Assembly: GCF_031769215.1 (NCBI RefSeq)
Contig: NW_026782173.1
Coordinates: forward strand, 2,294,001-2,358,000
DNA: 64,000 nt
Origin: Ylistrum balloti
Taxonomy: Eukaryota
Reading direction: 5' to 3'
A program made the translations under genes and the position numbers. Of this stretch, positions 3,474 to 39,534 are shown one piece after another. Every line of letters starts with the position of its first letter. The first letter of the stretch is position 1. Below the pieces are notes generated by a model, which saw only the letters and a list, made by a program, of their open reading frames with translations, was not told the origin of the DNA and ran no database searches.

Positions 3474-3478
3474 AGCTT

Positions 3479-14721: not shown

Positions 14722-15124
14722 TTTTACCCTGACTGATCTACCTGTTGCTGATTTTATCCGGATTGATCTACCTGTTGCTAATTTTACCCGGACTGATCTA
14801 CACGTTGCTGATGATACCCGGACTGATCTACACGTTCTGATGATACCCGGATTGATCTACCTGTTGCTGATTTTACCTGGACTGATCTACATGTTGCTGA
14901 ATTTACCCGCATTGATTTACCTGTTGCTAATTTTACCTGGATTGATCTACACGTGGCTGATGATACCCGGATTGATTTACCTGTTGCTGATGATACCCGG
15001 ATTGATCTACTTGTTGCTGGTTTTACCCGGATCGATCTACATGTTGCTGATGTTACCCGGACTGATCTACCTGTTGGTGAATTTACCCGGACTGATCTAC
15101 CAGTTGCTGATTTTACCCGGATTA
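14722..15124. repeat. Minisatellite, 30-bp unit (TTTTACCCGGACTGATCTACCTGTTGCTGA), ~13 copies, degenerating to ~15270
   Basis: Direct tandem copies; produces the periodic LPGLIYLLLI ORF. Confidence 0.93.
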
Positions 15125-15623: not shown

Positions 15624-15871
15624 NNNNNNNNNNNNNNNNNNNNNNNNNNNNNNNNNNNNNNNNNNNNNNNNNNNNNNNNNNNNNNNNNNNNNNNNNNNNN
15701 NNNNNNNNNNNNNNNNNNNNNNNNNNNNNNNNNNNNNNNNNNNNNNNNNNNNNNNNNNNNNNNNNNNNNNNNNNNNNNNNNNNNNNNNNNNNNNNNNNNN
15801 NNNNNNNNNNNNNNNNNNNNNNNNNNNNNNNNNNNNNNNNNNNNNNNNNNNNNNNNNNNNNNNNNNNNNNN
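15624..15871. other. Assembly gap (run of N)
   Basis: About 248 consecutive N. Confidence 0.99.
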
Positions 15872-15889: not shown

Positions 15890-16845
15890 AATCACAGACA
15901 GCTGTTGGTTACCATCGCATTTTTCTGTATTGTGCTGTCGTGTGCGGAAGCCATGTCGTACAATCGAGATCTGCACCATTACAGAATCAGTTTGATATAC
16001 TAAGACTCAACGTTAAAGTCTCTGAACGACTTTAACGCCATACATGGAAGGATGATGACGTCATGGTCTCTATATATAACTATAAGGATGAAAAGATAAC
16101 GTGACTTCCATCAGACTCTGATGACATGATGACTTTGAGGATGTGCTAAAATGCTGTGTGGCGCCGACAGTTTAAATTCTGAATGGTGCTGATGATATCT
16201 TTATCAAGATAACGAAAAATGAGCGTTCGTCTGTTTTGTATAAAAACACAGATATGGTTTCTTTTGTTGTAAATGGTATGATGACTATATATCATGAGAC
16301 CCGGATGTTACATTTTACCCTTATGACGTACATCAGTGTAACCTACAGTTTACAACACCAGAACACATCGATGAGATCAGTCTTAATTTTTGATATATCA
16401 ATAATATCTGAGGCTGAAATTAATTTGTTGTGGAAATTAATTGGTTATATTCACATGATTAACTGCTTTAGAGACAAGACTACAGTCATCGAAAAAGGTT
16501 TTTACAATAGAACGTCGTCCAACGTACTTGATATACACAAGTCTCCTTCCCGTTTTGCCTGCTAAATTTCATCAACTGGAAACTACAAGCATTTATTCTG
16601 CCGGCAAACTCTGGTGATAAGGCATCATTCGCCACCACTATACTACTAACATATCCTTGTATATGACTGTAATGTCTGATAGTATCCCGAACACCAGTGA
16701 TCCGGTTAATGTCGGATAGTATCCCGAACACCAGTGATCCGGTTAATGTCTGATAGAGTTTATATTGATATCGGTATTTGCATCCATAATCGTTATAGAA
16801 ACAGCATACAATATTGTTAGATTAACCAATCGCATGGGAGGATAA
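15890..16845 (+). pseudogene. psi-R1-like receptor pseudogene (stops, frameshifts, M3 and intracellular loop deleted)
   Basis: Fragments LLVTIAFFCIVLSCAEAMSY, STLKSLNDFNAIHGRMMT, NGADDIFIK, DPDVTFYPYDVHQCNLQFTTPE, ERRPTYLIY and SDSIPNTSDPV, a 37-bp tandem duplication (16678-16750), then directly M4 (FASIIVIETAYNIVRLTNRMGG*, stop 16843-16845). DNA of the extracellular part is closest to R1. Confidence 0.9.
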
Positions 16846-19807: not shown

Positions 19808-19824
19808 AGTATCCGAATCATATA

Positions 19825-21009
19825 ATGGACTCCTTAAACATGGAGGTTTACACCCGGATAATCATGCTTTCTATCCTCACTGTGAGTACCCATGCTGGAT
19901 CGTATGACGAAATGATAAGACTGCAAACAAATCTACTCGCGAACTATTCTAAATATATACGTCCTATACAAAATCAGGATGACGCGATGAATGTTTCCGT
20001 TATTTACTCGTTGACATATTTCCATGACTTTGACGCAGTGGCAGGTAAAATAACGGTGCTTGCATCTTTATATCTCCAGTGGAAGGATGAAAAGTTGTAC
20101 TGGAATCCAACCAATTATGGCAATATACAAAATGCATATTTTAATAATTCACAAGTGTGGACTCCTGTTGTTGCTTTAGCTAGTGGTATCGACAACTTAT
20201 TCATTCCAGTAACATCATCTATCACTGTTCAGCATTATGGATATGCTTCAGCTGTTGCTGCTGACGTCATAACATCAGTTTGTACACCTGATATCACCTA
20301 CTACCCATACGACACTCACAACTGCACAATAATGTTTGTTTCTATGGAAATTTATACTTTGATTCGTTTTCAGTCTGGAGTTATAGATATTGAATATCCT
20401 GATAATTTATTCTGGAAGATAACCAGAAAGGGATTTCGGGATTATATTAACAACAACTATACCTCTGGTATAGAAATAACTTACACTTTAGAGCGACGGC
20501 CGACATATGTGGTATATACAATCGTGCTTCCAGTGTCCATGCTGAATTTTGCTATTCTTCTTGTTTTTGTTCTGCCAGCAGATTCCGGGGAAAGAGTGTC
20601 GTTCGCTACTACCATGCTTTTAACCTTGACAATGTATATGACCATAATGTCGGACAGTATCCCTAACACCAGTGACCCAGTGTCCATTTTCACGGTTTCA
20701 CTGATGGTAAAACTCATTATCAGCGCCTTAATAGTGTTGTCAGTAATTATAACTCTGTGTGTGTATAAGGCCAATGAGAACAAAGCGATACCGCTGTGGT
20801 TGTTGTACTGCTGTAAACTAAGACGACCACGGGTAGATGTTGCGGATGAACAGACAGAGGAGAAAGACGACGTTAAATCTTACACGAAGGTGACTGTCGC
20901 CAACTGGCATTCTATAGGGAAGCGTTTGGATTTCATCTTCTTTGTATTGTTTGGCTTAACGATGGTTACGGAGACTTTAGTAAATATCCTAAGAATTACA
21001 TATCACTGA
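19825..21009 (+). CDS. R3: nAChR-like Cys-loop channel subunit (non-alpha), single coding exon
   Basis: Signal peptide ...VSTHA|GSY, WTP loop A, Cys-loop CTPDITYYPYDTHNC, PADSGERVSFATTMLLT M2, very short M3-M4 loop. Confidence 0.94.
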   Translation: MDSLNMEVYTRIIMLSILTVSTHAGSYDEMIRLQTNLLANYSKYIRPIQNQDDAMNVSVIYSLTYFHDFDAVAGKITVLASLYLQWKDEKLYWNPTNYGNIQNAYFNNSQVWTPVVALASGIDNLFIPVTSSITVQHYGYASAVAADVITSVCTPDITYYPYDTHNCTIMFVSMEIYTLIRFQSGVIDIEYPDNLFWKITRKGFRDYINNNYTSGIEITYTLERRPTYVVYTIVLPVSMLNFAILLVFVLPADSGERVSFATTMLLTLTMYMTIMSDSIPNTSDPVSIFTVSLMVKLIISALIVLSVIITLCVYKANENKAIPLWLLYCCKLRRPRVDVADEQTEEKDDVKSYTKVTVANWHSIGKRLDFIFFVLFGLTMVTETLVNILRITYH

Positions 21010-22451
21010 TCACTGTATATTTACATTATTATATAATGATAATTCTTTGATTGATTCATACATAAAATAGTACATATGTCAACTATAGTAAGGAATTGTA
21101 ACTTAGTGGTACTTATCTTTATAATTATACAAAATCATGTTTATTTCACATTGTTTAGTTTTTTGTTAGCTGACTTTCGTGAGGGAAAAAGAAAATATGA
21201 GTTCTCGCCATTCAGTACTGTTTGCTTCCATCCGGACGAACAACATACAGAGGGGGGGAAGGGTTCTTCATGTATGTATGGTATGAATTACATTTACATA
21301 TAAACGTGCTAGCGTGTTAGCTATACTTTTCGTTGTTATATATGTCTATAGGTATATAGAATTTCAATATTCAGATATTCACTTATTCAAGGGCAGACAT
21401 TGTTTACGTGTTTTTCGATAAAGCCCAATTAAGTTGTTTTTTTTTACTACTAAACAACTATTGATAACACATTTGCACATTGACTTGCGAAATAAAAAGA
21501 CTGGCGTATTGAGGATTAAATCATTGTTACCCTAAACTTCCTATCTTTTCAATGATTTTATTTTATTCATTTATCTATTTCATTTTTGTTACATTTGTTA
21601 AATTCTTTTTAGATATTATCTATGATAGAACACATACTGAAGCTATTTTTTCAAGTTAATAATGGTGCTATCGAGATATTCACAATCGGTCCAGCTTGAT
21701 AACGTTAAACGATTGTTTTGAAAGCGAGGCCGTTAATATTGTAAACACGAACACCTGACAGTGGGAAGAGATGATAGCGACAGTAGTGACACAGTCAAAA
21801 AAACAGAGTAAATATTTCAGGAATCATTTTCAAGATTATAATTTGAGTTCCTAAGTTTCATGCCCTACTTTGCATCTAGAAGGTTCTTTTTTAATCTGAT
21901 GTTTATTCTTCAAATTAATTCTGTTAATGATCCAATGTGTTAATCTAAAATATGTGATATATGAAATACAGTATGTAAATAGCCTTTAAAGCCAGCGAAG
22001 TAGCCAAGTTACTTCTTACAAAGCAAATTATGTTTTTGTTCATTCATTTTCTGTTTGCAAGTCGAATTTGAAAAACCTATTTTAAAAAAAAACAAATGCA
22101 AACAAAATCGTCATCTAAATTGAAAACCAATGAAAACGAGAGCACAATATGAATGAAGAAAATGATAAAGAAACGAGACTTCTTTAATTGTAAAATATCT
22201 TGTATTGGATATGCATAGTCGTATAAAAATAAGCGGAATATTAGGGCACCTTATCTAATCCCCCAACACCTGTTAAAAATCTGTCATTCGTGACAAAAAA
22301 CTTATAAACATCCGGTGCGCCTAAATCACAAATGTACTGTGACCGTACGAATGCATGCGTTCTTTTCCGTTCAAACTACTGTTGATATTCTGACTATCAC
22401 CTAGACACATGATCGCCAGTATATTTGCAATCAATAATTGTTTAAACAAAT

Positions 22452-22900
22452 ATGCTAGGGCAACCCCTTATTAATAGAGGACGGGCTCTCGCAATCTTCA
22501 TGGGAGATTGAACTAAACAGCAGGTTGCTTCTGACTTTGGAGTTCACAAACCCACTATAAGTCGGTTAGTTTTTCATCTCAACGTCTCTTACGTCCATGT
22601 GTGACGTCGCGACGTCAAGATCGGTTCAAGTTAGGCTTGCCTACTTGCGTGACAGGAGATTAACGACTGCCGAAACTGCACGGAACACCATTATTAATGG
22701 AAACCGTCGAATACAACACAAACATTTAATGAATAGGTTGCGGGAAGTAATTTTACGCCTCAGTACGTCGGTTTGCTACTGATACTTCAACGTCGAGCAT
22801 GTCGTATGCGATGATTGACGGCACGTGTGCCCAGACGTTTTCCTATGAGACGTTGGCGGTCCATGTTCTTCATCGATCAATCTCGATCCACGTAATTTCG
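22452..22900 (+). mobile_element. Decayed Tc1/mariner transposase fragment
   Basis: RGRALAI...QQVASDFGVHKPTISRL (paired-type HTH), RLAYLRDRRLTTAETAR...NRLRE, and RWRSMFFIDQSR (resembling W..VLFSDESRF), broken by stops and frameshifts. Confidence 0.75.
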
Positions 22901-23632
22901 ATCAGATAGCAGTCAACGTGTGTACCGATGTTGAGGAGAGCGTCTTGTAGAGTCTTGCGTTTCGTAATTAAAAACGATATATCTGTTCAAGGAGGATACT
23001 ATATTAGCGATTGGATTGACAACTGTCGTTTATCATCTTTGTGTATTTTAGGGAACGCAGTTCATGGTGCCCTAACGAAGTCCTCATTTGTTAATAAAAT
23101 CTCAGAAAAATTGAAAACTGATAAGCAAATATTCGAAATCAACTTTTGTATTCTCACATTTAGGCCTAATGCTCTTAGATATTATTTTATAAAACCTTAC
23201 AATCGAAGTTTCTTTTCCTTTTACTCTGTATATATCATGTTTTTATTTCCTTATCCAGGGTTAAAAGCAAGTTATAAAAAAATAATGAAACATATATATA
23301 CATCTTACACTTTGTATGTCTCTTACTGTGAATGTTTTAGGTTACAACGTCATGTAACCTATACATCAGATAGGCGTGGTGTTTGACTAAAAATCCAAAA
23401 TGAATATAATGCTATCTTTATGTTTCAATACCGTCTATCTGAATATACATTTCAATAATGATTTTTATGAACTATGATAAGCAACCTGACTAAGCCTACA
23501 AATGTAGTATTTACAACGTAGGACACATCCTTGATCTAGTGTGCAGCAAAAGTAACTATCGATTAAAATCGGTAGTCTAAATGGTTTTCAGACAATAATA
23601 ATGGCACACCGTCTTAATCAAACTTCGGCCCT

Positions 23633-23680
23633 TGACATCACTGACGAGTCCGACAAGGACCGAACAGCTGTATAATGCCA
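23633..23680 (+). ncRNA. Degenerate type I hammerhead ribozyme relic
   Basis: CTGACGA core (23641-23647), stem II GTCC/GGAC, then CGAA in place of GAAA, palindromic stem III CAGCTG, TA cleavage position, and imperfect stem I TGACATCA/TAATGCCA. Confidence 0.6.
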
Positions 23681-23974
23681 TTTAAGTAATTACCCTGTAT
23701 TTGGATCTACAGTATACCCCCACCCCAACTTCCCCTAACTCTGACACGTTCAGGATGCTGAATGGCCCAGCTTGAAAGGATTCCTGAAATCCATACGTCG
23801 ATAGAGCTTGATATTTACATTGTTTACCAATACTAGGTTTCTACCAATGAGATATAGATTATTGATAAGATAGCCATTATACACATATAGAGACCTGCGA
23901 GTTATGAGAAAGAACAGATTTGCTTAAGACATCATACGTACACATTACACAGAGGTTTACAGAACGTGCTAAGT

Positions 23975-25132
23975 ATGCAAGCCCATATCCGGACAATTCT
24001 TTCATGTCTTCTCTTTGTGTGCATACATTCTGGATCCTATGACGAAATGGCATCTCTTCATAACGCCCTTTTGTCAAACTACTCCAAGAATATACGCCCT
24101 ATACAAAACCAGGACAGCGCGATGAGCATTATATTTGTGTTCACTATGCCTTATTTCCGTGAATTCGACGCTATAACGGGAGAGTTCACTATAATGGCGT
24201 CTATATACCTTGGTTGGATGGATGAAAAATTAAACTGGGATCCTACCGATTATGGCAATATCCATACATCCTATTTCTCCGCCTTTCAGGTGTGGACACC
24301 ATATCTTGCGTTAAGTAGTTCTGTAAACAATCAATTAATTACAGCTACGTCTTTAGTCACTGTTGAAAGCACCGGGTATTCGTCTGCTCTTTACTCCAAA
24401 ATAGTCACTTCAGCATGTTCACCAGATATTACTTATTACCCGTATGATGTCCACAACTGCAGTCTTTATTTTACAATGATGGAGCCCTACACGATTATCG
24501 ACTTGAAACTTTACCCGCAGGATAACTACATTGAAAACACTGACAATTTATTTTGGATTTTATCCAGAACAGGTATGAAGAAGTATATTTCTAAAAACTA
24601 CACTTCAACTATAAAAATAACATATTCACTAGAACGGCGACCTACATACTTGTTGTACACTATAATGCTGCCAGTTTGCTTGTTGAATTTCGTTACCCTC
24701 CTGGCGTTTGTTCTGCCAGCAGATTCCGGGGAAAGAGTGTCGTTCGCTACTACCATGCTTTTAACGTTGACAATGTATATGACTATAATGTCGGACAGTA
24801 TCCCTAACACCAGTGACCCAGTGTCAATTTTCACGGTTTCACTGATGGTAAAACTCATTATCAGCGCTCTAATAGTGTTGTCAGTGATCCTTACTCTGTG
24901 TGTCTACAATACCAGTGAGGATAAACACATCCCTAAATGGTTGCTTTTCTGCTGCAAACTGAGGTCAGGACGAGTAGACGTCGATGACAATTTGAAATCT
25001 CCCGCAAAAAGGACAGTTGTCTCCTGGAAATGTATAGGAAAACGGTTTGATGTAGTTTTCATTATTTTGTATTCCATAGTGACTGTTACCGAGACAGTTG
25101 TGAACGTTGTAAGAATTTCATATCGTCTTTGA
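23975..25132 (+). CDS. R4: nAChR-like Cys-loop channel subunit (non-alpha), single coding exon
   Basis: ATG at 23975 (MQAHIRTILSCLLFVCIHS|GSY), Cys-loop CSPDITYYPYDVHNC, PADSGERVS, four TM helices. Confidence 0.94.
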   Translation: MQAHIRTILSCLLFVCIHSGSYDEMASLHNALLSNYSKNIRPIQNQDSAMSIIFVFTMPYFREFDAITGEFTIMASIYLGWMDEKLNWDPTDYGNIHTSYFSAFQVWTPYLALSSSVNNQLITATSLVTVESTGYSSALYSKIVTSACSPDITYYPYDVHNCSLYFTMMEPYTIIDLKLYPQDNYIENTDNLFWILSRTGMKKYISKNYTSTIKITYSLERRPTYLLYTIMLPVCLLNFVTLLAFVLPADSGERVSFATTMLLTLTMYMTIMSDSIPNTSDPVSIFTVSLMVKLIISALIVLSVILTLCVYNTSEDKHIPKWLLFCCKLRSGRVDVDDNLKSPAKRTVVSWKCIGKRFDVVFIILYSIVTVTETVVNVVRISYRL

Positions 25133-26526
25133 TATATCAGGCAATTAATGGACAAGGTGAAAGGTTCCCACATTAATGGGCAGTCACTTTATTACCAAGT
25201 GATTGATTTTCGAACTGAAATTCATTTACTTTTGATTAAAGCATTTGTATTTCTTTTTCAAATATCATTCCTTTCTTATATAGCAATACATTATAATACA
25301 AGTGATTAACACACCCAGATATATGTTCCACATTAAGAATATCTAGCGGTATGTCCACTTTCCCCCGTTTTTCTTTCAGTCAATTTCACATGAAGGTATA
25401 CTATTAACATATTTAAAGATATGGTTATGTAACTAAAACAAATACTAATGCACATGCAAACTCTAACTACTATTGCAGAGTGCACCAACAACTCATTTAA
25501 GAAGTATGAAAAAATACATAACAGGTTTCACCAATTCATTTATGTATATACATTACTGTATGTAAGAGACAAGAAAGCACTTAGAAATGAGAAATTAGAA
25601 AGATTGTATGTGACCTGAGGTCGGTCCGCCGTTTTGACTAGACATGCTTTTTTATCTTATCGATGCATTCTGTATTTTTATAGAAGTCTCCTTGGTCTTG
25701 TTTTAATAGAGTAAGGTCTAGCGAAATATTATTGCACATATGCGTCCTTCCCAAGATGATCACCAGATCTATAATACAAGTTTCCCCAAGACAAACATTT
25801 AAAACATAAAGGTAGAGCACTCTTAGTTTTATTATATTCCCTGGACAAAGTAAGTGACATATTGATACTCTTAAATAAAGTATATAGATTTTATTAGTAT
25901 AATAAGGCAGTGTTTTTGCCTTAGGACTGAGGAGACTTTAACTACTAACGTACTAAGATTTTATTTCTTAAATATTCCAGTAAAAAGTGAGTTACTTCTG
26001 ACATGTTTAAACTAGGTTTGCCTTCAAGAAAAGTGAAGGTTATATTCATTGAATATTATAAAGTAATATTTAATACTAATAATATAAGTTGATAAGACAA
26101 ACAAGTATCCTTAACTCCACAGCTGGCCGGAACAGTTTTTTCTTTTACGGAATCTTTAAGGTACAAGATAATTTTAAGTGCGATATAATATATTTGCCGA
26201 ATCCGATTTTTTTTCATGGCTCTTTTGTTTCTTAATCAACTTTCTACATATTTTATTAGATGTACTGGCATTGTATCTAACGCAAGTATTGAAACCTAAA
26301 AAGCGATGTTATGTTAACAATGAAAATACAATATAAGAGCTAAATCTATCTCTATATAGATTTCACATATATAATCCTTTCAAACCCAGTTTATTCACTT
26401 AATCTCCAAATACCTTTGATATCTATGACTTTGGTCAGTACAGAAAGTTCAGACATGGGAAGTGATTTGACCATGAAATCGAATTCATATCAAGAATAAT
26501 CCGATACCTTGGAAAATCACAATACT

Positions 26527-26691
26527 ACAGAGCCCAAGGCAACATATCTCCTTTTCAAAACAGAGCCCAAGGCAACATGTTTCCTTTTCACAACAGAGCC
26601 CAAGGCAACATATTTCCTTTTCACAACAGAGCCCAAGGCAACATATTTCCTTTTCACAACAGAGCCCAAGGCAACATATTTCCTTTTCACA
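26527..26691. repeat. 33-bp tandem repeat x5 (ACAGAGCCCAAGGCAACATATTTCCTTTTCACA)
   Basis: Five near-identical direct copies. Confidence 0.93.
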
Positions 26692-29580
26692 GTAACAACT
26701 CTTATTTTATTATATCTTTTTAACTTCTTTTTATCTAACTCACGAGTTCAAATAATATTGAACTATTTTTTTTATTTTTGAAAAATTACTCGGTATGTTT
26801 TATAATTTCTAAGACTATATGTTTAAAGGTTGCTGCGAGAATCAATAACTCTTTGGCTATATTTCGTAGATCCTTGTGTAATCAAGAATAAATTCATTCT
26901 CAATACAATAGTAGTGTGCAGTAATGGTATGCATTTTAAACATCGATGAAAACGCCATACAAACATATGGTTGGAATACACTTTATTCTAAACACACATA
27001 ATAGATTGGTCGTTTAATTTATCAGTAATGACAAATATTGATCATAGCATTGCTGAATAGACTAATGTAAATAGCTTCGTTCGATTTCTTATATCGAATC
27101 AGCCCTATGCAATTCGATTACAAATACTGCGCCAGGAACGGAATACACTAATTAGCGCCCAGTCTAAGTGATCATTTGAATGGTTTTAATGTGTGATTAA
27201 AAGAGGCGAGTGCGACCATTATTTAAGTAAAGACATACAGACATACATTTAGAAATCGTTCACGTTCTTCTCAAAAACAGACGTTAGATGTCTCAAATAT
27301 AAACATAAATGTCCAGCAAATACATCATTGTACAAAAGACGCTCTTAAGTATCAATCGAATTTCAATATATATAATGTTTTCAATTGAGAATTTACCCCC
27401 TCAAGACAACATAAATAGAATTAGCTGAAATACCAAATGTTCATATCAATATTCGTGGGATATGAGGTATGTAAAGTCATGATTTTGAGAATAATCACTG
27501 GTTTCTTCGTATTATGCTAGAAACATAGCAACACCTCAAACACACATATATGATAAACGGAGTATGTAATAACTTCTGTTTTAATGTCCCGTCTATGAAA
27601 ATGTCAAAGGTATATAATTGCTCCCTATGCAGTCATATTTTTCCATTCCTTCATTACATCTTGATCTGGACCCAATCATCTTTGGCAGATATAGAAATTG
27701 ACCTGATATTAAGTATATGGTTGTATGATGAAATGATTGGGAAGTTCAGATTTGATTATTTACAAATTGTTTTTTCTGATACTGAATAAAAGACATGACA
27801 CCTCTTCTATACGATTTACAATATCCAAACTTGCCATTAGCTGTAGGCAAACATGTGGCACCGCCACTACTTGTAAACAGCATTTATATGTCATAAGAGG
27901 CGACTGATGTGGCAAGTTAATTATCTAATTTGAAATATGAAACAAAACAAACTGTTATAGGTAATAAAGTAAAATGATAATATAAAATGGCTTTATTTAT
28001 CTATTTATTCATCATCTAGGGATATGTGACTTTGATTCGCATTCGTAGTAAAACTCCAAATGCCTCGGACTTTACTTTTCTCTAAAACTGAAAGCATTTG
28101 TAAATACGTTTAGTTGTCACAGAAAGAGCCCATGAAAGTAAGAACATTAGAGTAAAAAATTCTACTTCAGTACATCAATTCAAATGCTGGCTTTGTTTTT
28201 GTTTTCATCATTTCTATTAATGTATATTTTTTCATTAATTTGAATCTATAATGGGTTCTTGTACAAAAAGTCTTTGTAGACCTATGTTGACAAGAAATGT
28301 CTTCAATTATACTGTATTTTGGCCTGCAACCTGTGAACACTTTCTTTAATAACTAGACGAACAATTTACTAGATTGTATTCAATGTTTGGCCATATATAT
28401 ATGTGTGTTTGTGTTGTATACCTAGTTTGTGCTGGCATTAACATTGTATTTAACATATTTCTTCTTTTAAAAATAAATATGTAAACGACAGAGCTTTTAA
28501 TGAGCAAAGCGTTTACTTACTTGTACGCATACACATAATAATTGAAACAGGCAGTGTCTGAAACAAAGTCATACAGAAAACAGACAAAAATAGTCATTTC
28601 GCGTTGATGTAAATCTAAAATTGTACTTAAACATTGATTGTTTAATTGGGTTTATGGGATTTTCGCCTACATTAATGTGTTGTGTCACAGACGAAAGACA
28701 AATATGCACTCACTGTATACGTATCTTACATAAACTATTACAAACGTTTGTTGATGGGATCCTTTGTCTAGTTTGGTCATGTCGAGTTACAACTACATTA
28801 AAGGATGCCATAATGTATTTGTATTTTCTTTTTTAATCTTAAGATTACTTTATGTTGCAGCTGCGAATACTTTAAAATATATACGTTGATTTAGATCGTT
28901 AAATGTTTTAGCTGCACATATATCTTAGTATTGGATGATAACTTACTCTCGCGAGAATAGGACCAGGTAATCAATTTTTGCATCTTGATGTGTAATTCAT
29001 TGCTGTTACTTATTTTTAAAATGTAACTGAAAGTGAGCGACTCCCAAGTTGTGTTTTTATATAGTTAAACAATAAGTTATCATGATTTCTTCACAATTCT
29101 TATAACTCTAGCTGTTTATCACTTCGGCATTTTTTCATTGGAGTACTGCTCTGGTTTTCAGATAAAAAAATGGCAACACAAATAGAAAGGAGGTAACTCT
29201 GTCCAGTCTCTGATTTTAATTCCCGAACACTTTAAAGAGCTTCGCTCAGGCGCCCATGCAAGCTTCGCAGTGAAAAGTTATTAATGCCGTTATGTATAAA
29301 TAGAAAGCACTTTAGCCATTCCATATAAACTAATAGATTACAAACAAGGAGCATCGGAATTCATTGATTTTGGATGGCGAATTTGCAAGATTTCGATTGA
29401 GTAGCGTCGTGTCCGCCAGACAGTAATATATGATGCGTTGTTATCACAGGTATTTGAGCAAATCGATATAGTGAAAGCCATTGAAATTATTCTTTTGTCC
29501 ACATTGTTGAGTGTTATCTTGACGACAGGCTGCAGGCTTATCTGCATTGGAATATTGTGTCCATAATTTTGCCGTTTAAT

Positions 29581-30756
29581 ATGAAGTTTCACATCTTGAC
29601 GATTGTAGCACATCTCTGCTTTTTATGCACACATGCTGGATCCTATGACGAAATGGTATCACTGCATAATGATCTTTTGGCAAGCTACTCCAGTACCATA
29701 CGCCCTATACAGAATCAGGATGATGTTTTGAGTATAACTTTCGTATACACTCTGCCGTATTTTCGTGAATTCGACGCGGTCAGTGGGAAATTTACGGCAT
29801 TAGTGTCAATAAGCCTCAGTTGGAATGACCAAAAATTAAACTGGAATCCTGCAAGTTATGGAAATATTCATTCATCTTATTTCTCTTCCTCTCAGGTGTG
29901 GACACCATATCTTTTCTTATCAAACGCAGTAGACATTGGATTAATCCCAGTTTCATCGTCTGTCACTGTTTACAGTTCTGGATTTTCATTTGCGCTTTTC
30001 TCTAAAGTGGTGACCTCAACATGTTCACCTGATATCACTTACTATCCGTATGATATTCACAAATGTACTCTTGTGTTTACAATGTCTGAACCTTACACTG
30101 TTGTCGATCTAAATCTGAATCCACAGGGTGACATCTTTGAAAATACAGATAATCTGTTCTGGATAGTATCACGAAAAGGACTCCAGAAATTTATTTCTAA
30201 TAACTATACATCATTCATAGAAATAGCATACTCACTAGAGCGGCGACCAACATACTTGTTGTACACTATAATGCTGCCAGTTTGCTTGTTGAATTTCGTT
30301 ACCCTCCTGGCGTTTGTTCTGCCAGCAGATTCCGGGGAAAGAGTGTCGTTCGCTACTACCATGCTTTTAACCTTGACAATGTATATGACCATAATGTCGG
30401 ACAGTATCCCTAATACCAGTGACCCAGTGTCCATTTTCACGGTTTCACTGATGGTAAAACTCATTATCAGCGCTCTAATAGTGTTGTCGGTAATCATAAC
30501 TCTGTGTGTGTATCATACTAATGAGGACAAGCCAATCTCTAAATGGTTACTATTTTGCTGTAAACTGAAGTCAGGACAAAAAGAGACGGGAAAGAACGAT
30601 GCTGTTGATGATACGTTTAACATCTCTGATGAAGTAACAGCGGCTTCCTGGAAATCTGTAGGACAACGTTTGGATGTACTTTTCTTTATTTTGTATTTCG
30701 TCTTGATTGTTACTGAGACTTTGGTAAATGTGGTGAGAATTTCTTACCGACTTTAG
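29581..30756 (+). CDS. R5: nAChR-like Cys-loop channel subunit (non-alpha), single coding exon
   Basis: ATG at 29581 (MKFHILTIVAHLCFLCTHA|GSY), Cys-loop CSPDITYYPYDIHKC, PADSGERVS, four TM helices. Confidence 0.94.
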   Translation: MKFHILTIVAHLCFLCTHAGSYDEMVSLHNDLLASYSSTIRPIQNQDDVLSITFVYTLPYFREFDAVSGKFTALVSISLSWNDQKLNWNPASYGNIHSSYFSSSQVWTPYLFLSNAVDIGLIPVSSSVTVYSSGFSFALFSKVVTSTCSPDITYYPYDIHKCTLVFTMSEPYTVVDLNLNPQGDIFENTDNLFWIVSRKGLQKFISNNYTSFIEIAYSLERRPTYLLYTIMLPVCLLNFVTLLAFVLPADSGERVSFATTMLLTLTMYMTIMSDSIPNTSDPVSIFTVSLMVKLIISALIVLSVIITLCVYHTNEDKPISKWLLFCCKLKSGQKETGKNDAVDDTFNISDEVTAASWKSVGQRLDVLFFILYFVLIVTETLVNVVRISYRL

Positions 30757-33700: not shown

Positions 33701-33935
33701 ACACATTGCGACAAATTAAATATTGCTGCTGAATGCAGGTTTCTCATAGTCTGTCCTTATTGATATCCAAAATAAACTTGAGACACAATCCCTTATTAGC
33801 TGGACTCGAAGTCATTATTATTGATGACAGATTTGCCATTATATTCGCTTTGTAAATGTTTGTAGCAATAACTGGAATTTGTGTTAGATTCGACATGTCA
33901 ACAACATAGCAAACTGTTGTCCTTCAATTACAAAG

Positions 33936-34010
33936 TATCTAAACAGGTATAATAGATGATTATCTAAACAGGTATAATAGATGATTATCTAAACAGGTAT
34001 AATAGATGAT
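33936..34010. repeat. 25-bp tandem repeat x3 (TATCTAAACAGGTATAATAGATGAT)
   Basis: Three exact copies. Confidence 0.92.
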
Positions 34011-34239
34011 TTATCAAGGTTAGTACAAAATGCTGTTTCATTTCTTACAGTGATTCGTTGTTAGTAGCACAGACATTGTCGATATTCAGTTCGGGTATCT
34101 ACTTTTAGTACCAATATTTTGTTATTTAATATCGCATTGATGACACAGTAACGATCTGTGGGAATAATACCAATGCGTTATTGAGAATAACTTAATTACT
34201 CCAGACGTGATACATCTTATTGCAAAGCCTATATCAAGG

Positions 34240-34647
34240 ATGCTTATCATGGCAGGTCAAATTGGGACAATCATAAGGCTCCTCTTCTTCATAAACGTAC
34301 ATGCCGGATGACAACATTGCATCACTGCATACAAACCTCCTGTCAAATTACTCACGGTAAATGCTTCCTCTGCAAAATCAGGACGCGGCGATCAGTATAG
34401 GTTTTACGTACTACTCCATGCCATATTTTCATGAATTCGACGCTGTAAGTGGAATGTTTACAGTATTAATGTCAGTTTACCTGGGTTGGGAGGACGAAAA
34501 ATTAAACTGGATTTTATATTTTTAACGCGTGTTGCTTACTGGCAATATATCTGGAAACAATTAGATTTATCTTTCGTTATTTTGTATTATGTCGTAACAT
34601 TTATTGAAACTGTTGCTAGCTTTGTTAGAATTATGTACCGTCTATAA
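34240..34647 (+). pseudogene. psi-R4/R6-like receptor remnant with a large internal deletion
   Basis: MLIMAGQIGTIIRLLFFINVHAG*, a frameshift, NIASLHTNLLSNYSR*MLPLQNQDAAISI...MPYFHEFDAVSGMF...YLGWEDEKLNW, joined at ~34511-34525 directly to M4 (WQYIWKQLDLSFVILYYVVTFIETVASFVRIMYRL*). Confidence 0.88.
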
Positions 34648-37600
34648 TATACAGAGTATTTTGTTTTGAGTTCGCCTTATACAATACTAATACAATGTTT
34701 ATAGAAAAGTCTCGATACGTACACCAAATGGGGTTTCATCACATATTTATATCACTAATTTTACTACATTACATTTCAGTCGATGTTATTTGTATTATTT
34801 AACTGACACATTACATTTTCTTCACTTGTGTTTGCAGATAACACATGTAGCTCACTGCTTAATGTATTGTGTCTATATGTTTCTGAACAAAATGAAAAAG
34901 TGTTTTAACTTCACAGAAGTTGATCAAGTTTTGTAAATAAACAACATCTTCAACGAATCGTTCATTTTGAATGATTTGGTCAAACTGTATTGTATATAAC
35001 TAACTTCCCATCTGGATTTGTATTACACAACTTATTTCGCTGTTGATTCACATCCACTGGTAAGTCGTTTGTAAAGTATTTTAAATGGCATGTTGGTGGC
35101 CAGCTCCGCTAGTGAAAGCTCCGAGTGCCGATTCTGAAGTCTTGTATATTGACTCTTTTATCAGCATGGTATTGATATTATTATTGATATCATTTTTAAA
35201 TGGTCTGATATTATTGATTACCAAATTAAACTGATGTAAAATTAATCATCGTTTTTCTTTTCTTATATTCAAAATTGCTTCGGTGAATTGTAGTTTTGTC
35301 AATTTGCTTTATTTCAAAATCAGTCGCTTGTCTTTATTGGAGAGAGTGTGAGGTAATTACATCCTAAGTTTGTTCATATCAGTATATATCCTTATGTCTT
35401 CGGTACAGGAACAAATAGGTAAACTGTCATTTAAATTAATCTAGATAGAACTGCATATTGAAGAAGGTAGACGTCAATATATTATTTTATCGATCACACA
35501 TGTCACGAAAATCTCAAGCATTGTAAAGAACCGAGATACTGATAACAAAACGTGAATCATATGTTCCTCATGATATTGACTTTAAATTCTTTAAATTCAG
35601 TTTACAGACATCAAGTAGTTTTCTTTTTACAAATCCGTGTGACATGGATACTTTGGGATCATCAAAGTAAAGCAGATTATTGTTTATGTCTAAAAATTGA
35701 TCAACAAAATCCCAGTTTTAAATATATTAATATATTTTTTCTGCAGGTGTGAAGAAGAACGAAATCAATAACCTTGATATGTTTTAAAGGTGTACTTTTT
35801 CAACCTTTAGGTGTTAATCAATGAACTATTAAACCTTAAAAATATGTGACATTGATAAATATTCTAAACCTTAGCAGAAACAAATAATTTGTGCTAGTTT
35901 AAGAATCCATTGAACGTCAGGTACACGAACTTAATTAACAGTAATGTACTGGATCAGCAAATCAATCCTAACGTTAACGAGTAGTCTAATGTAAACATCA
36001 TCATCATCATTCAATGTATCCCTTCGTTTGACACAAAATCAGTATTAATATGGCTTTTTAAATGGACTTTAAGAGTGCCTACATCACGAATCGTCAATTA
36101 TTATAGGTCTGTGTTAGAGAATAAGTCCTGTTATGATCTGATTGGGAATTACATAGGACAGGTGAAATAAAAAAAAAAAAAAAAAAAAGATAATGTATTT
36201 GTTACAACAACAACCCAGAAAATACTTACAAGTCAACAGAATCTTAATTTGAACTAACTAGAGCAATAGGAAAGTAATATCAGACGTTCAGGAATATTAA
36301 GCGTATTCTTATTCTTCGACAACACCAGCCATTTAGATATTTGCCAATCAAAGAAAACAATGCAACGCCTCCATATGAGAACAATGCTGGTAACAACAGA
36401 ACCACATGGAATACATTCATATACAAATCAAATACATTCAGCTGCATATTACATACGGAAATAGAATATTTCCCAATTATATCATTATACGAGAAACTAT
36501 ATCCATCAGCCTATACTTTTCGAGACTCAGTGTTGTGAGTTAATATGTTAGTTGTTAGCATCCTGCACGAAAATCGTAATATTATGAACAAATCCTTGAA
36601 TATCGAATCTAACGCCGAGACCACCCCACTCATCAACCACCTGAGGAACGGTCATATGTTATCATTGTTTTTTTTTTTTTTTTTTTGAGTGGAAAGCTAG
36701 ATTGTGAATGGTCAATGCAAACAAGTAGCATAATATACCATATGTGATATAACATGAAAAATAAACTTACTCCAGAAAAAAACATTCAATTATCGAATAA
36801 GTAATAAAATGCGAGCATGAGTTAATGTACTGACACTCCATTGAACAAATGTCATGAATGTGTTAGGTAAATACGTTGGACATTTATAAAGTCTTGTCGA
36901 ATTCTAAAAGTTCACATTGAAAAATAGGTCTTGAAATTTTATTGAGGGTAAGTAGTAAATTGATGTAGTTTAAAAACAATTTATTAATACTCTCTGCCAA
37001 TATTTTTTTAAATAATAGGATGGTGTTGTTTTAGGAAACAATGGCAAAGCAATCATGTATTGTTTCATATAAGCTGCCATTTTCTTACCTGGATTTTTAT
37101 CTGCGATAAACCTGTGTTTCACTCAACCTATCTTCATTTGAATGAGATTAAATTAGATATACAAATTTTATTTGATGAAAAAGTACTGAATAATTGAGTT
37201 TGACTTCATTTAGCACTCAAACATATCTGAACAAATTAAATTTAAATGTGGGATGATTTTGTACTACACCCTGACATATTTCTAAAATCTATCATAGATG
37301 ATAAACAATATTTAACTTAATTACCATACATTACATAAATAATAATCATTTTAGTGTTATACAATAAAGTGCCCGAAAGAAAGTGTAAAGATAAAGAGAA
37401 AGGTATCTGAAATAAAACTAGAGTATTTGAAATAAAGAGAAAAAGTATATCATTATTGGTTAAGAAAATGTCCCATTTGTGGTAATTGGTATCAAATCAA
37501 CTAATTTATCGATGAGAAATGATAAATAATTTAATTTTTTTATTAATTCGTTAACTTTTGGGCTAAGGGTGTACAAACACAAGGTACAATGTATACTTTA

Positions 37601-38355
37601 ATATATAATGTAGTCAATAAACTAAAACGTGATAAATTAAATATTTGTATTGTAAGTTTACAAAATTATCATAAATATAGCATTCAAAATGAAATTAAGA
37701 CATTCAAACATTTCACAATATATATGAAATAGGTTTCTTCACACTTTATAAGGTTATAGAGACTTAAAAGTAATTAAAACGTGAAAATTGTTTAGATATA
37801 TCCTTTAATATTTATATTTAAAAAATAAATATCATGAACATCAACTTTTTTAAAAAATGCAACTATTACCAGTTGCTGAGTGCCAACAAGTGAAGTTTTA
37901 TAGGTAAATTTAACTGGTATTACTTTAAGGGAAAAGACTATATTCACTATAAAATTAAACTGCCTTATAAGAGATTGAAAAATGTTGGCATTCAGACATA
38001 CACTCCTGATGGAAAGGAAAAGCTGTTGTGTATACCGTGTGCAATGAAGTGTGGTAAACGACCCCATGCCTAACAGAACAGCTTAGCCCGTTCCAGTTAA
38101 TCCTCAACAAATAAGCAGTACATTCAGTGGTTAGTTGATTTTTGAAAGAGCAATATTTGTCGGAGAAGCTTAGTGTATAAATAGTTTCACAATACCCGAT
38201 TCTTCACTGCCCTAACTCATATAGAGTATTTGATATAGTGGCTTCCATTCATATAACGATTGGAACAACACAACAGTTATCATTAGTGCCGGGACACATA
38301 GACGGCCCATGTTGTAGGTACATCGTCACTTTGATTGTGTGCTAAGTAAGTGTTA

Positions 38356-39534
38356 ATGATGAAGAAACTTACCATAGCAATATTGGTGTGTCTCTTTGCG
38401 AGCTCATATGCTGGATCCTACGATAACATGGCGACACTGCACACGGACCTTCTGTCGAACAACTACTCACGATACATACGTCCTGTACAAAACCAAGATG
38501 ACGCAATAAGTGTAACATCAATTTTTTCAATGCCGTATTTTCGTGACTTCAACGCTGTCACCGGAACTTTCACTTTAATGGCATCTGTATACGTCGGTTG
38601 GTTGGATGCAAAATTAAACTGGAATCCTGCCAATTATGGGAATATTCAACTATCTTATTTTTCTGCGTCTCAGGTATGGACTCCAAATATTGTCATAGCA
38701 AGTAGCGTAGAAAGTGATGCTCTCTCACCCACATCTTCAGTAACCGTTACAAGTTCTGGGTATTCTTTTGCTCTCTATACTAAAATAGTGACATCAGCGT
38801 GTTCACCGGATATTACTTATTACCCATATGATGTTCACAGCTGCAATGTTTCTTTGGCATTGTGGGAACCATTTACAGTTATGGACTTGAATCTCAGTCC
38901 CCAGGGGGAATACTTTGACTTTACCGACAACTTATTTTGGATTGTATCCAGAAAAGGGGAACGGAAGTATATTTCTAGCAACTACACTTCAGTTATAGAT
39001 ATAACGTACTCAATAGAACGGCGACCTACCTATTTGATATATACTATCATGCTTCCTGTTTGCCTGTTGAATTTCGTTACCCTCCTGGCGTTTGTTCTGC
39101 CTGCAGATTCCGGGGAAAGAGTGTCGTTCGCTACTACCATGCTTTTAACCTTGACAATGTACATGACTATAATGTCGGACAGTATCCCTAACACCAGTGA
39201 CCCAGTGTCCATTTTCACGGTTTCACTGATGGTAAAACTCATTATCAGCGCCTTAATAGTGTTGTCAGTAATTATAACTCTGTGTATCTACCATACCAGT
39301 GAGGATAAACCCATTCCTAAATGGTTGCTTTTCTGCTGCAAACTGAAGCCAGGACAAGTGGAGGCAGAAAAGAATGAGGTTGTTGAAAATGTGTACAAAT
39401 CGCAGAACATTGGGACGGTTGCTACCTGGCAAGCTATAGGGAAACGTTTGGATGTAGCTTTCTTTATATTGTTCTTTGTTTGTACTCTTACGGAGACTCT
39501 TGTAAATGTAGTAAGAATTACCTACCGTCTATAA
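38356..39534 (+). CDS. R6: nAChR-like Cys-loop channel subunit (non-alpha), single coding exon
   Basis: ATG at 38356 (MMKKLTIAILVCLFASSYA|GSY), Cys-loop CSPDITYYPYDVHSC, PADSGERVS, four TM helices, AATAAA at 39569. Confidence 0.94.
   Translation: MMKKLTIAILVCLFASSYAGSYDNMATLHTDLLSNNYSRYIRPVQNQDDAISVTSIFSMPYFRDFNAVTGTFTLMASVYVGWLDAKLNWNPANYGNIQLSYFSASQVWTPNIVIASSVESDALSPTSSVTVTSSGYSFALYTKIVTSACSPDITYYPYDVHSCNVSLALWEPFTVMDLNLSPQGEYFDFTDNLFWIVSRKGERKYISSNYTSVIDITYSIERRPTYLIYTIMLPVCLLNFVTLLAFVLPADSGERVSFATTMLLTLTMYMTIMSDSIPNTSDPVSIFTVSLMVKLIISALIVLSVIITLCIYHTSEDKPIPKWLLFCCKLKPGQVEAEKNEVVENVYKSQNIGTVATWQAIGKRLDVAFFILFFVCTLTETLVNVVRITYRL

What the first reader, a model, noticed from the sequence alone, without database searches (positions are those of the whole stretch)
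20570..39285. Pore-coding block almost identical in DNA across R3-R6 while ligand-binding domains are only about half identical
Seen: a 191-nt block from the end of M1 through M2 to M3 (R3 20570-20760, R4 24711-24901, R5 30317-30507, R6 39095-39285). By manual count R3 differs from R6 at 3 positions, from R5 at 5 and from R4 at 9, so most synonymous sites are shared. The R3 and R6 extracellular domains are only roughly 50% identical in protein. Established: purifying selection conserves amino acids but not synonymous sites over long periods; localized silent-site identity between old paralogs is the signature of interlocus gene conversion. Inference: concerted evolution maintains a common pore and subunit-interface module under free-diverging sensor domains, a 'constant pore, variable sensor' design that would keep subunits able to co-assemble.
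Basis: partly seen in the sequence, partly recalled or inferred. Interest (0 to 1): 0.88.

Follow-up and report, generated by a model that had tools for sequence, protein, structure and literature searches.

The report
Pore-limited gene conversion among scallop receptor genes
Four neighbouring, intronless nicotinic-receptor-like channel genes of a scallop have recently copied the roughly 200-base stretch that encodes the channel pore from one another, while the rest of each gene stayed old and divergent; this is a clear but ordinary case of regional gene conversion in a gene family where it seems not to have been described.

Summary
The four 191-nt blocks differ from R3 at 3 (R6), 5 (R5) and 9 (R4) positions.

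The window is a scallop tandem array of seven single-exon Cys-loop (nAChR-like) genes, R1 to R7.

- **Silent sites:** the silent-site difference (pS) among R3-R6 is 0.07-0.22 in the block but 0.54-0.76 in the extracellular domain.
- **Controls:** R1 and R2 encode almost the same pore protein, yet keep pS of 0.54-0.77 in the block.
- **Other species:** between-species orthologues keep block pS of 0.36-0.62, so neither protein-level nor nucleotide-level constraint explains the identity.
- **Trees:** the extracellular domain places R3 outside a strongly supported clade of R4-R6 plus Argopecten irradians genes and rejects R3-R6 monophyly (AU 1e-5). The block groups R3-R6 together.
- **Tract ends:** they differ between pairs (179-263 nt), and runs tests give P ≤ 0.0004 for four of the six R3-R6 pairs.
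- **Assembly:** contigs from four other individuals break at the tract edges, with about 4x summed depth inside R3's block in three of them, so this is not an assembly artefact.

Verdict: recent, repeated interlocus gene conversion. The adaptive "design for co-assembly" reading is untested and is not needed. This is a new instance of a known process, like TLR1/TLR6 and clustered protocadherins.

The parts
19825..21009 (+). R3, a single-exon Cys-loop (nAChR-like) receptor gene of 394 aa
   Evidence: Intact ORF. Pfam PF02931 and PF02932. Its extracellular domain groups with A. irradians A1, near the Mizuhopecten R3-like gene M3, and lies outside the R4-R6 clade.
20566..20766 (+). Converted tract in R3 (end of M1, M2, M2-M3 loop, M3).
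   Evidence: Best near-identical segments are 20566-20760 vs R6 (3 differences), 20566-20766 vs R5 (5) and 20566-20744 vs R4 (5). Block pS is 0.07-0.17 against 0.69-0.76 in the extracellular domain. Contigs from independent individuals end at 20595 and restart at 20731.
23975..25132 (+). R4, a single-exon receptor gene (first ATG at 23975; the ORF is open from 23966)
24626..24943 (+). Converted tracts in R4 (M1 to just past M3).
   Evidence: 24626-24882 vs R5 (257 nt, 6 differences) and 24681-24943 vs R6 (263 nt, 14 differences). M1 pS for R4-R5 is 0.04-0.10. Contigs from other individuals end at 24673.
29581..30756 (+). R5, a single-exon receptor gene (first ATG at 29581; the ORF is open from 29557)
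30232..30513 (+). Converted tracts in R5.
   Evidence: vs R4 30232-30488; vs R3 30313-30513; vs R6 30287-30507.
38356..39534 (+). R6, a single-exon receptor gene (first ATG at 38356)
   Evidence: The public gene model P0001 starts at an internal Met.
39065..39327 (+). Converted tracts in R6.
   Evidence: vs R3 39091-39285; vs R4 39065-39327; vs R5 39065-39285.
6021..7337 (+). R1, an older paralogue in the same array. It serves as an unconverted control.
   Evidence: The block protein is 81% identical to R3-R6, but block pS is 0.65-0.74. Orthologues exist in Pecten maximus and Mizuhopecten.
9695..10990 (+). R2, an older paralogue in the same array. It serves as an unconverted control.
   Evidence: Block pS vs R3-R6 is 0.69-0.77. 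A Pecten orthologue is 63% identical.
45929..47185 (+). R7, the most divergent array member, used as outgroup
34310..34644 (+). Remnant of an R4/R6-like gene. It keeps about 66 aa of the N-terminal extracellular domain and about 38 aa of M4. The middle, including the pore block, is deleted.
15959..16750 (+). Degenerate receptor pseudogene fragment next to the assembly gap at 15624-15871

Best explanation
R3-R6 are old tandem paralogues of an intronless nAChR-like (Cys-loop) channel family in a scallop.

Within the recent history of this species, short patches of 180-260 nt covering (M1)-M2-M3 have repeatedly been copied between them by non-allelic (interlocus) gene conversion. This erased silent-site divergence there. 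The extracellular domain, the M3-M4 loop, M4 and all flanking DNA kept their old divergence.

Most likely reason for the location (inferred, not shown): purifying selection on the pore makes this the only stretch where diverged copies still share runs of identical bases long enough to seed heteroduplex. Each conversion then raises the similarity further, a positive feedback. Divergent flanks stop the tract, or selection removes conversions that scramble the ligand-binding domain.

Shown: the local dS collapse, two-sided tract ends that differ between pairs, tree conflict, species-specific homogenisation, and independence from the reference assembly.

Inferred: the homology-seeding feedback, the role of selection against extracellular-domain conversions, and the direction and donors of the events.
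For: - **Identity counts:** 3-10 differences per 191 nt among R3-R6.
- **Silent sites:** sliding-window and regional Nei-Gojobori pS falls to 0.00-0.22 in the block, against 0.54-0.76 in the extracellular domain and 0.39-0.89 after M3.
- **Protein-constraint controls:** R1 and R2 have pN of 0.13-0.16 to R3-R6 in the block but pS of 0.65-0.77.
- **Nucleotide-constraint controls:** orthologue pairs across genera (R1/Pecten, R1/Mizuhopecten, R2/Pecten, R3/Mizuhopecten M3, R3/A1, R6/A3, R4/A2) have block pS of 0.36-0.61.
- **Runs test:** a Sawyer-type permutation gives P <= 0.0002 for R3-R4, R3-R5, R3-R6, R4-R5 and A2-A3. On third codon positions alone, P <= 0.0004 for the same five pairs.
- **Trees:** in the extracellular-domain tree, R4-R6 plus A2-A5 form a clade with 97-100% support that excludes R3. 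Extracellular-domain data reject R3-R6 monophyly (AU 1e-5 for nucleotides, 4e-4 for protein). In the block tree, R3-R6 form a clade with 94.6/88 and 95.4/84 support.
- **Relative distance:** R3-R6 differ at 3 block sites, while R6 and its closer extracellular-domain relative A3 differ at 33 (binomial 1e-7).
- **Tract ends:** they differ between pairs, and the tract is internal, with divergent sequence on both sides. This excludes a single unequal crossover.
- **Flanks:** self-BLAST similarity stops at the coding ends, so the duplications are old.
- **Second species:** the A. irradians array shows a weaker version, with M1 and block pS of 0.20-0.44 against 0.58-0.79 in the extracellular domain for A2-A5, leaving aside the recent duplicates A4/A5.
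- **Independent individuals:** in four other individuals' assemblies, unique contigs run from R3's flank to 20595 and resume at 20731. Summed depth is about 3.6-4.4x in R3's block in three of the four runs; in X3 it does not rise there (13.5 vs 17.8). Over R4's block the rise is about 1.7-2.8x in all four.
- **Seeding sites:** in unconverted pairs that involve R1 or R2 but not R7, the longest near-identical stretches of the whole gene (17-55 nt) all lie inside this block.
Against: - The block alignment alone prefers R3-R6 monophyly (delta lnL 8.3) but cannot reject the extracellular-domain-like topology (AU p = 0.115). At 186-192 nt it has little power.
- Block pS is somewhat low (0.36-0.62 vs 0.61-0.92) and GC3 somewhat high (0.52-0.63) in all family members. 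Some general synonymous constraint, compositional effect or ancient conversion therefore adds to the signal.
- Orthology of R4-R6 to particular A. irradians genes is unresolved.
- No read spanning a whole copy was examined. Logan contigs show presence only, and their summed depth is not a formal copy number.
- No conversion event was seen segregating in a population.
Confidence: 0.86

Rival explanations
1. Adaptive concerted evolution. Conversion of the pore and interface module is favoured by selection because it keeps R3-R6 subunits able to co-assemble into heteropentamers with a uniform pore, while the sensors diversify. This is a rival only for why the tract sits where it does, not for the mechanism.
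For: The converted stretch coincides with M2, which lines the pore, and M1/M3, which pack against neighbouring subunits (alignment plus established pLGIC structure). The block protein is 98-100% identical among R3-R6. Similar arguments were made for TLR1/TLR6 (PMC2077338). Unchecked first-reader notes report the same pore-limited pattern in other arrays of this genome.
Against: - R1, R2 and orthologues in three other genera keep about 80% or higher block protein identity without homogenised silent sites, so purifying selection alone holds the pore.
- The differences that conversion erased were almost all synonymous, so they give selection little to act on.
- Tract ends vary and overrun the module.
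- Neither co-expression nor co-assembly is known.
Confidence: 0.15
2. Nucleotide-level constraint on the block (codon usage, an mRNA structure, an editing or regulatory element, or an antisense gene) preserves silent sites, without any conversion.
For: Block pS is moderately reduced and GC3 raised in every family member, including between-species orthologues. Antisense ORFs of 97-131 aa overlap the block in R1, R3 and R5.
Against: - Orthologues and older paralogues still differ at 36-77% of silent sites in the block, while R3-R6 differ at 7-22%.
- The shared silent states are species-specific.
- The RNA fold of the block is no more stable than shuffles (z = +0.28), and there is no Rfam match.
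- No antisense ORF of 90 aa or more overlaps the block in R4 or R6.
Confidence: 0.04
3. Assembly or polishing artefact. Reads from paralogues were cross-mapped, and the reference consensus in the block was homogenised or collapsed.
For: Conserved repeats of about 200 nt in tandem families are a known weak spot of short-read polishing (general knowledge).
Against: - De Bruijn contigs from four other individuals, under two organism labels and two studies, reproduce the unique-to-shared transitions at 20595/20731 and 24673. Summed depth is about 4x in R3's block in three of the four.
- The four copies keep private and pairwise-shared differences in the reference.
- An independent chromosome-level assembly of A. 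irradians shows the same kind of pattern.
Confidence: 0.03
4. The four genes are very recent duplicates. The block shows their true young age, and the rest of each gene has diverged unusually fast.
For: Block divergence (1.6-5%) is close to allelic diversity (about 1%).
Against: - Silent sites outside the block are saturated (pS 0.54-0.89), not only replacement sites.
- Flanking and intergenic DNA shows no detectable similarity.
- In the extracellular-domain tree, R3 lies outside a clade of R4-R6 plus A. irradians A2-A5. Its split from R4-R6 therefore predates the split of the two genera.
Confidence: 0.02

Closest known systems
TLR1/TLR6 regional gene conversion in mammals (Kruithof et al. 2007, PMC2077338)
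   Same: Tandem receptor paralogues. The paralogues are more alike than orthologues in one contiguous region that includes the transmembrane and signalling part, through independent species-specific conversions. The ligand-binding N-terminal part follows orthology.
   Different: That case involves two genes rather than four and a much longer tract (about 300 aa). It is a different protein fold and was documented in nine species. Here only two species give usable arrays, and the tract is about 200-260 nt.
Clustered protocadherin variable exons (fugu, PMC1852091; Noonan et al. 2004, cited there)
   Same: Arrays of single-exon receptor units. Lineage-specific 'regional gene conversion' homogenises the membrane-proximal and transmembrane 3' part to more than 99% DNA identity, while the 5' ectodomains stay divergent. 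Raised GC3 in converted regions was used as supporting evidence.
   Different: Protocadherin tracts are one-sided (the 3' end of the exon) and long. Here the tract is internal, with divergent sequence on both sides. Here GC3 is raised in the block of all family members, so it does not discriminate.
Expanded intronless tandem nAChR genes of bivalves (Jiao et al. 2019, PMC6896357)
   Same: [quoted passage not shown] Scallops are bivalves.
   Different: That paper interprets the trees as stepwise, lineage-specific duplication. It contains no occurrence of 'gene conversion' or 'concerted'. The present array shows that part of each gene does not follow the duplication history.
Cephalopod chemotactile receptors (CRT1; PDB 8eis and 9e6b; review PMC11526382)
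   Same: Mollusc nAChR-derived pentameric channels that have lost the acetylcholine site. They have a conserved cation pore and a diversifying ligand pocket, and they form homo- and heteropentamers.
   Different: R6 matches human alpha7 (2.5e-37) better than CRT1 (8e-30 to 2e-29). Orthology, ligands and expression are unknown. In the papers read here, diversifying selection on the CR ligand pocket is described but gene conversion is not.

Membership tests
Cys-loop / pentameric ligand-gated ion channel, nAChR-like branch | Neurotransmitter-gated channel ligand-binding domain followed by the transmembrane domain | tested here: met
   Pfam PF02931 (E 1e-27 to 3e-30) and PF02932 (E 7e-12 to 2e-14), above gathering scores, in R1, R3 and R7. 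Precomputed for R6 and R2.
Cys-loop / pentameric ligand-gated ion channel, nAChR-like branch | Signature disulphide loop, Cys-x13-Cys, in the extracellular domain | tested here: met
   All of R1-R6 carry C-x13-C with the PDITYYPYD core. R7 has a variant core (translations, alignment).
Cys-loop / pentameric ligand-gated ion channel, nAChR-like branch | Four transmembrane helices with a cation-type M2 (Glu at -1', Leu at 9') | tested here: met
   The alignment of R6 to human alpha7 covers M1-M3, and M4 is at the C-terminus. The motif SGER followed by VSFATTMLL places Glu at -1' and Leu at 9', by the standard numbering (established knowledge).
Classical acetylcholine-binding (alpha-type) nAChR subunit | Vicinal Cys pair in loop C and the aromatic box (loop A Tyr, loop B Trp) | tested here: not met
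   In the alpha7 alignment with the family alignment: no Cys-Cys in loop C in any of R1-R7; the loop A Tyr is replaced; the loop B Trp is kept only in R6 (Met, Met and Ser in R3, R4 and R5). These are therefore orphan nAChR-like subunits, not demonstrated acetylcholine receptors.
Interlocus (non-allelic) gene conversion / regional concerted evolution | Local collapse of silent-site divergence between paralogues whose remaining sequence is anciently diverged | tested here: met
   Block pS is 0.07-0.22, against 0.54-0.76 in the extracellular domain and 0.39-0.89 after M3. Fisher P is 1e-12 to 1e-28 for block vs rest.
Interlocus (non-allelic) gene conversion / regional concerted evolution | Not explained by protein-level or nucleotide-level constraint (same region diverged in unconverted paralogues and in orthologues) | tested here: met
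   For R1 and R2 against R3-R6, block pS is 0.65-0.77 with pN 0.13-0.16. For orthologue pairs across four genera, block pS is 0.36-0.61.
Interlocus (non-allelic) gene conversion / regional concerted evolution | Significant runs of shared polymorphic sites (GENECONV-type test) | tested here: met
   My own permutation version of Sawyer's test gives P <= 0.0002 for four of the R3-R6 pairs (R3-R4, R3-R5, R3-R6, R4-R5) and for A2-A3. On third positions alone, P <= 0.0004 for the same pairs. The published GENECONV and RDP programs were not available.
Interlocus (non-allelic) gene conversion / regional concerted evolution | Phylogenetic conflict between tract and flanks, with paralogues grouping by species in the tract | tested here: inconclusive
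   The extracellular domain rejects R3-R6 monophyly (AU 1e-5 and 4e-4) and supports R4-R6 plus A2-A5 at 97-100%. The block tree groups R3-R6 (95/84-88) but cannot by itself reject the extracellular-domain topology (AU 0.115).
Interlocus (non-allelic) gene conversion / regional concerted evolution | GC3 enrichment of converted tracts (GC-biased conversion) | tested here: inconclusive
   Block GC3 is 0.52-0.63 in all genes, converted or not. M1 GC3 is 0.48-0.67 only in the genes that share the M1 tract, against 0.33-0.41 in the others, but those genes form one clade.
Interlocus (non-allelic) gene conversion / regional concerted evolution | Direct observation of events (segregating converted alleles; long reads phasing each copy) | not tested
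   Only Logan contigs of four runs could be laid.
Cephalopod chemotactile receptors | Orthology to CR genes and activation by hydrophobic environmental ligands | not testable with these tools
   There is only a sequence match to CRT1 that is weaker than the match to alpha7. No functional or expression data exist.

The most novel reading that the evidence does not exclude
Pore-limited conversion is not a one-off. It may be a recurrent, possibly selected feature of the hugely expanded intronless nAChR-like arrays of bivalves. Each array would then behave as a set of interchangeable sensor domains on one shared, continually re-synchronised channel core, which would allow free heteromeric mixing of subunits within an array. 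Three unchecked first-reader notes from other pieces of this genome describe the same M1-M3 pattern, and the A. irradians array shows a weaker version.
Probability: 0.15. Interest if true: 0.7.

Novelty: new member of a known kind. Interest (0 to 1): 0.42.

Why it matters
**Tree inference.** Bivalve nAChR-like genes number in the hundreds, and their history has been read from full-length trees as lineage-specific tandem expansion (PMC6896357). Here, adding the converted segment raises support for species-specific clades. Support for A2-A5 rises from 65.5/69 with the extracellular domain alone to 99.9/100 with the full length. Support for R4-R6 rises from 89.7/85 to 95.7/94. Conversion can therefore make old duplicates look young, and it should be masked before dating or orthology calls.

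**Family-specific interest.** This appears to be the first documented case of regional concerted evolution in a pentameric ligand-gated channel family. Full-text searches found none, within the limits of that library.

**A testable system.** The array offers a natural test of whether identity of the pore module matters for subunit co-assembly.

**Gene models.** The array seems under-annotated. R3, R4 and R5 were not returned by the protein search, and the public R6 model lacks its signal peptide.

Tried and rejected
- **'Reverse' signature in A. irradians.** The recent duplicates A4/A5 differ more in M1 plus block (12/267) than elsewhere (23/843). This is not significant (Fisher p = 0.16), so I dropped it.
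- **Pecten maximus R1-like gene vs its neighbouring pseudogene.** Block identity of 0.93-0.97 against 0.75-0.93 elsewhere is no more than constraint would give.
- **RNA structure or a known RNA family in the block.** Fold z = +0.28 and no Rfam hit.
- **AU test on the block alone.** Not significant (p = 0.115). I report it as a limitation.
- **Donor lineage of the shared block.** R3-R6 are about equally far from Mizuhopecten M3 (28 differences from R3) and from A2-A5 (27-38 differences). The donor cannot be resolved.
- **Other arrays of the same genome.** A second protein search with R7 returned no further proteins from this genome, so generality could not be tested.
- **Earlier findings near this place.** None. 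Word and genome look-ups gave only unchecked notes.
- **Single unequal crossover producing chimeric genes.** Rejected, because every tract has divergent sequence on both sides.

Full report
**What is there.** The window comes from a scallop genome: assembly GCA_031769215.1, contig JAUZWB010000498.1, about 2.294-2.358 Mb. It carries a head-to-tail array of seven intact single-exon genes on the + strand:
- R1 6021-7337
- R2 9695-10990
- R3 19825-21009
- R4 23975-25132
- R5 29581-30756
- R6 38356-39534
- R7 45929-47185

There are also two remnants, at 15959-16750 and 34310-34644. All seven are Cys-loop receptors. R1, R3 and R7 carry Pfam ligand-binding and transmembrane domains above threshold. 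R1-R6 share the C-x13-C loop, and R7 has a variant core. M2 is of the cation type. The best solved relative is human alpha7 nAChR (2.5e-37), and octopus chemotactile receptors score 8e-30. None has the loop-C Cys pair, and the loop-B Trp survives only in R6. They are therefore orphan nAChR-like subunits of the kind known to be massively expanded, intronless and tandem in bivalves (PMC6896357).

**The observation.** The other pairs differ at 8-10 positions. By the alpha7 alignment, the block spans the end of M1, M2, the M2-M3 loop and M3. The R3 and R6 extracellular domains are 51.5% identical in protein.

**Is it more than constraint?** Sliding and regional Nei-Gojobori estimates show the proportion of silent differences (pS) falling to 0.00-0.22 among R3-R6 in the block. 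It is 0.54-0.76 in the extracellular domain and 0.39-0.89 downstream of M3.

The controls are decisive. R1 and R2 encode nearly the same pore (pN 0.13-0.16 to R3-R6; 79-82% protein identity) yet have block pS of 0.65-0.77. Orthologue pairs across genera have block pS of 0.36-0.61; these pairs are R1/Pecten, R1/Mizuhopecten, R2/Pecten, R3/Mizuhopecten, R3/A1, R6/A3 and R4/A2.

In control pairs, block nucleotide divergence is 0.43-0.58 of the divergence in the rest of the gene. In the R3-R6 pairs it is 0.04-0.20. On the most favourable control ratio, about 30 differences are expected between R3 and R6, and 3 are seen (P = 6e-10).

A mild family-wide reduction of block pS and a raised block GC3 (0.52-0.63) do exist. 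They contribute a baseline, not the effect.

**Tests for conversion.**
- A permutation runs test in the manner of Sawyer, on polymorphic sites of an 11-gene alignment, gives P <= 0.0002 for R3-R4, R3-R5, R3-R6, R4-R5 and A. irradians A2-A3. With third codon positions alone, P <= 0.0004 for the same five pairs.
- The best near-identical segments have different ends in different pairs: R3-R6 20566-20760; R3-R5 20566-20766; R3-R4 20566-20744; R4-R5 24626-24882 (including M1); R4-R6 24681-24943 (running 42 nt past the block). In pairs that involve R1 or R2 but not R7, the longest such stretch is 17-55 nt and always lies inside the block.
- Every tract is internal, with divergent sequence on both sides. 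Similarity between copies stops at the coding ends. The duplications are therefore old, and a single unequal crossover cannot explain the pattern.
- Within the block, sites split the copies as (R3,R6)/(R4,R5) and also as (R4,R6)/(R3,R5). These partitions are incompatible and indicate several events.

**Comparison with other species.** The closest public relatives form a six-gene array in Argopecten irradians (A1, A6-psi, A2-A5; CM084268.1, 26.58-26.63 Mb). There is also a partly assembled array in Mizuhopecten yessoensis, with a frameshifted R3 orthologue (M3) and a gap-truncated R6-like gene.

Extracellular-domain trees place R3 with A1 and near M3. They unite R4-R6 with A2-A5 at 97-100% support. 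The extracellular-domain data reject a clade of R3-R6 (AU 1e-5 for nucleotides, 4e-4 for protein). Block trees instead unite R3-R6 (94.6/88 and 95.4/84).

R3's block differs from R6's at 3 sites. R6 differs from A3, its closer relative by extracellular domain, at 33 sites (binomial 1e-7). The block alone is too short to reject the extracellular-domain topology (AU 0.115). That is the main statistical limitation.

A. irradians shows the same phenomenon more weakly. Setting aside the recent duplicates A4/A5, M1 and block pS is 0.21-0.44 among A2-A5, against 0.58-0.79 in the extracellular domain. Between the two species, block pS for R3-R6 against A2-A5 is 0.51-0.70. Homogenisation is therefore species-specific, as conversion predicts and nucleotide constraint does not.

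**Artefact check.** Logan contigs of four other individuals, under two organism labels and two studies, were laid on 19800-25200. In all four, a unique contig runs from R3's extracellular domain to 20595, about one k-mer into the tract, and the next long contig starts at 20731. For R4 the unique contig ends at 24673, inside the longer R4/R5 tract.

Summed word depth over R3's block is 3.6-4.4 times that of the flanks in three of the four runs. In X3 it does not rise there (13.5 vs 17.8). Over R4's block it rises about 1.7-2.8 times in all four. The tool warns that this is not a formal copy number, but it fits four near-identical copies. The independent A. irradians assembly shows the same kind of pattern. 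Reference polishing or collapse is therefore unlikely.

**Rival nucleotide-level functions.** The block RNA folds no better than shuffles (z = +0.28), and there is no Rfam match in 19-40 kb. Antisense ORFs of 90 aa or more overlap the block only in R1, R3 and R5.

**Mechanism and interpretation.** The best explanation is recent, repeated interlocus gene conversion among R3-R6, with tracts of about 180-260 nt. Block divergence (1.6-5%) is only a little above the roughly 1% difference between individuals, so the process is recent and probably ongoing.

Why there? In unconverted paralogue pairs, the longest identical runs of the whole gene lie in this block. This fits a passive model, which is inferred rather than shown. 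Purifying selection on the pore preserves enough nucleotide similarity to seed heteroduplex, conversion then reinforces that similarity, and divergent flanks or selection on the ligand-binding domain end the tract.

R1, R2 and orthologues keep the same pore protein without conversion. The erased differences were almost all synonymous. The tracts overrun the module.

**Comparison with the known.** The pattern matches regional conversion in TLR1/TLR6 (PMC2077338) and in clustered protocadherin variable exons (PMC1852091). The gene family context matches Jiao et al. 2019, whose text never mentions conversion. Full-text searches combining gene conversion with Cys-loop, ligand-gated channel or bivalve nAChR found no report of this.

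It is thus a new member of a known kind, with moderate interest. A practical consequence is that including the converted segment inflates support for species-specific clades. Support for A2-A5 goes from 65.5/69 to 99.9/100, and for R4-R6 from 89.7/85 to 95.7/94.

Three unchecked notes from other pieces of this genome describe the same pore-limited pattern. If confirmed, the phenomenon would be general in this genome, which is the more interesting reading.

Noticed in passing
window 17314-19807: A 2.5-kb minisatellite (72-bp unit, 35 copies, 91% matches) ends 18 bp before the R3 start codon, so R3's proximal upstream region is entirely tandem repeat.
   Followed up: partly
window 3477-5718; 11266-11736; 14722-15123: Further satellites lie between array members: a 19-bp unit x 119 copies between the retroelement ORF and R1; a 37/74-bp unit just downstream of R2; and a 30-bp unit x 13 before the assembly gap.
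   Followed up: no
window 553-2172 (-): A 539-aa ORF with retrotransposon Gag and SCAN-like domains (Pfam) lies at the upstream edge of the receptor array. It is annotated as a 519-aa gene in the public record.
   Followed up: partly
window 34310-34644: A receptor remnant keeps only about 66 aa of the N-terminal extracellular domain and about 38 aa of M4, 55-63% identical to R3-R6. About 780 bp, including the pore block, has been deleted internally.
   Followed up: partly
window 15959-16750 (gap 15624-15871): A degenerate receptor pseudogene fragment sits directly beside the only run of N in the window.
   Followed up: partly
window 19825-30756 and 38356-39534: R3, R4 and R5 were not among the proteins of this genome returned by the protein search, although they are about 60-70% identical to the query. 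The public R6 model (368 aa) starts at an internal Met and lacks the signal peptide. The array appears under-annotated.
   Followed up: no
window R3-R6 extracellular domains: The loop-B tryptophan, the key cation-pi residue for acetylcholine, is kept only in R6 and is Met, Met and Ser in R3, R4 and R5. No gene has the loop-C Cys-Cys. The subunits are unlikely to form a classical acetylcholine site.
   Followed up: partly
window 20481-20783 (-), 30204-30497 (-), 6695-7090 (-): Antisense ORFs of 97-131 aa overlap the pore block in R3, R5 and R1, but no antisense ORF of 90 aa or more overlaps it in R4 or R6. This is probably a by-product of codon composition.
   Followed up: no
L004 13869-15075 and 20978-21187 (Mizuhopecten yessoensis NEDP02003449.1): The R3 orthologue is split by one frameshift and annotated as two proteins of 181 and 204 aa. 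An R6-like gene is cut off by an assembly gap, so only its C-terminus is visible.
   Followed up: partly
L005 9485-10660 (A. irradians CM084268.1): A sixth array member has an in-frame stop in the extracellular domain and is annotated only as a 220-aa transmembrane fragment. Its block differs from those of A2-A5 at 19-22 of 191 sites, so a pseudogene may take part in the exchange.
   Followed up: partly
M1 segment of R4, R5, R6 and A2-A5: GC3 of the M1 segment is 0.48-0.67 in exactly the genes that share the M1 tract and 0.33-0.41 in all the others. This could be a trace of GC-biased conversion, but it is confounded by shared ancestry.
   Followed up: partly
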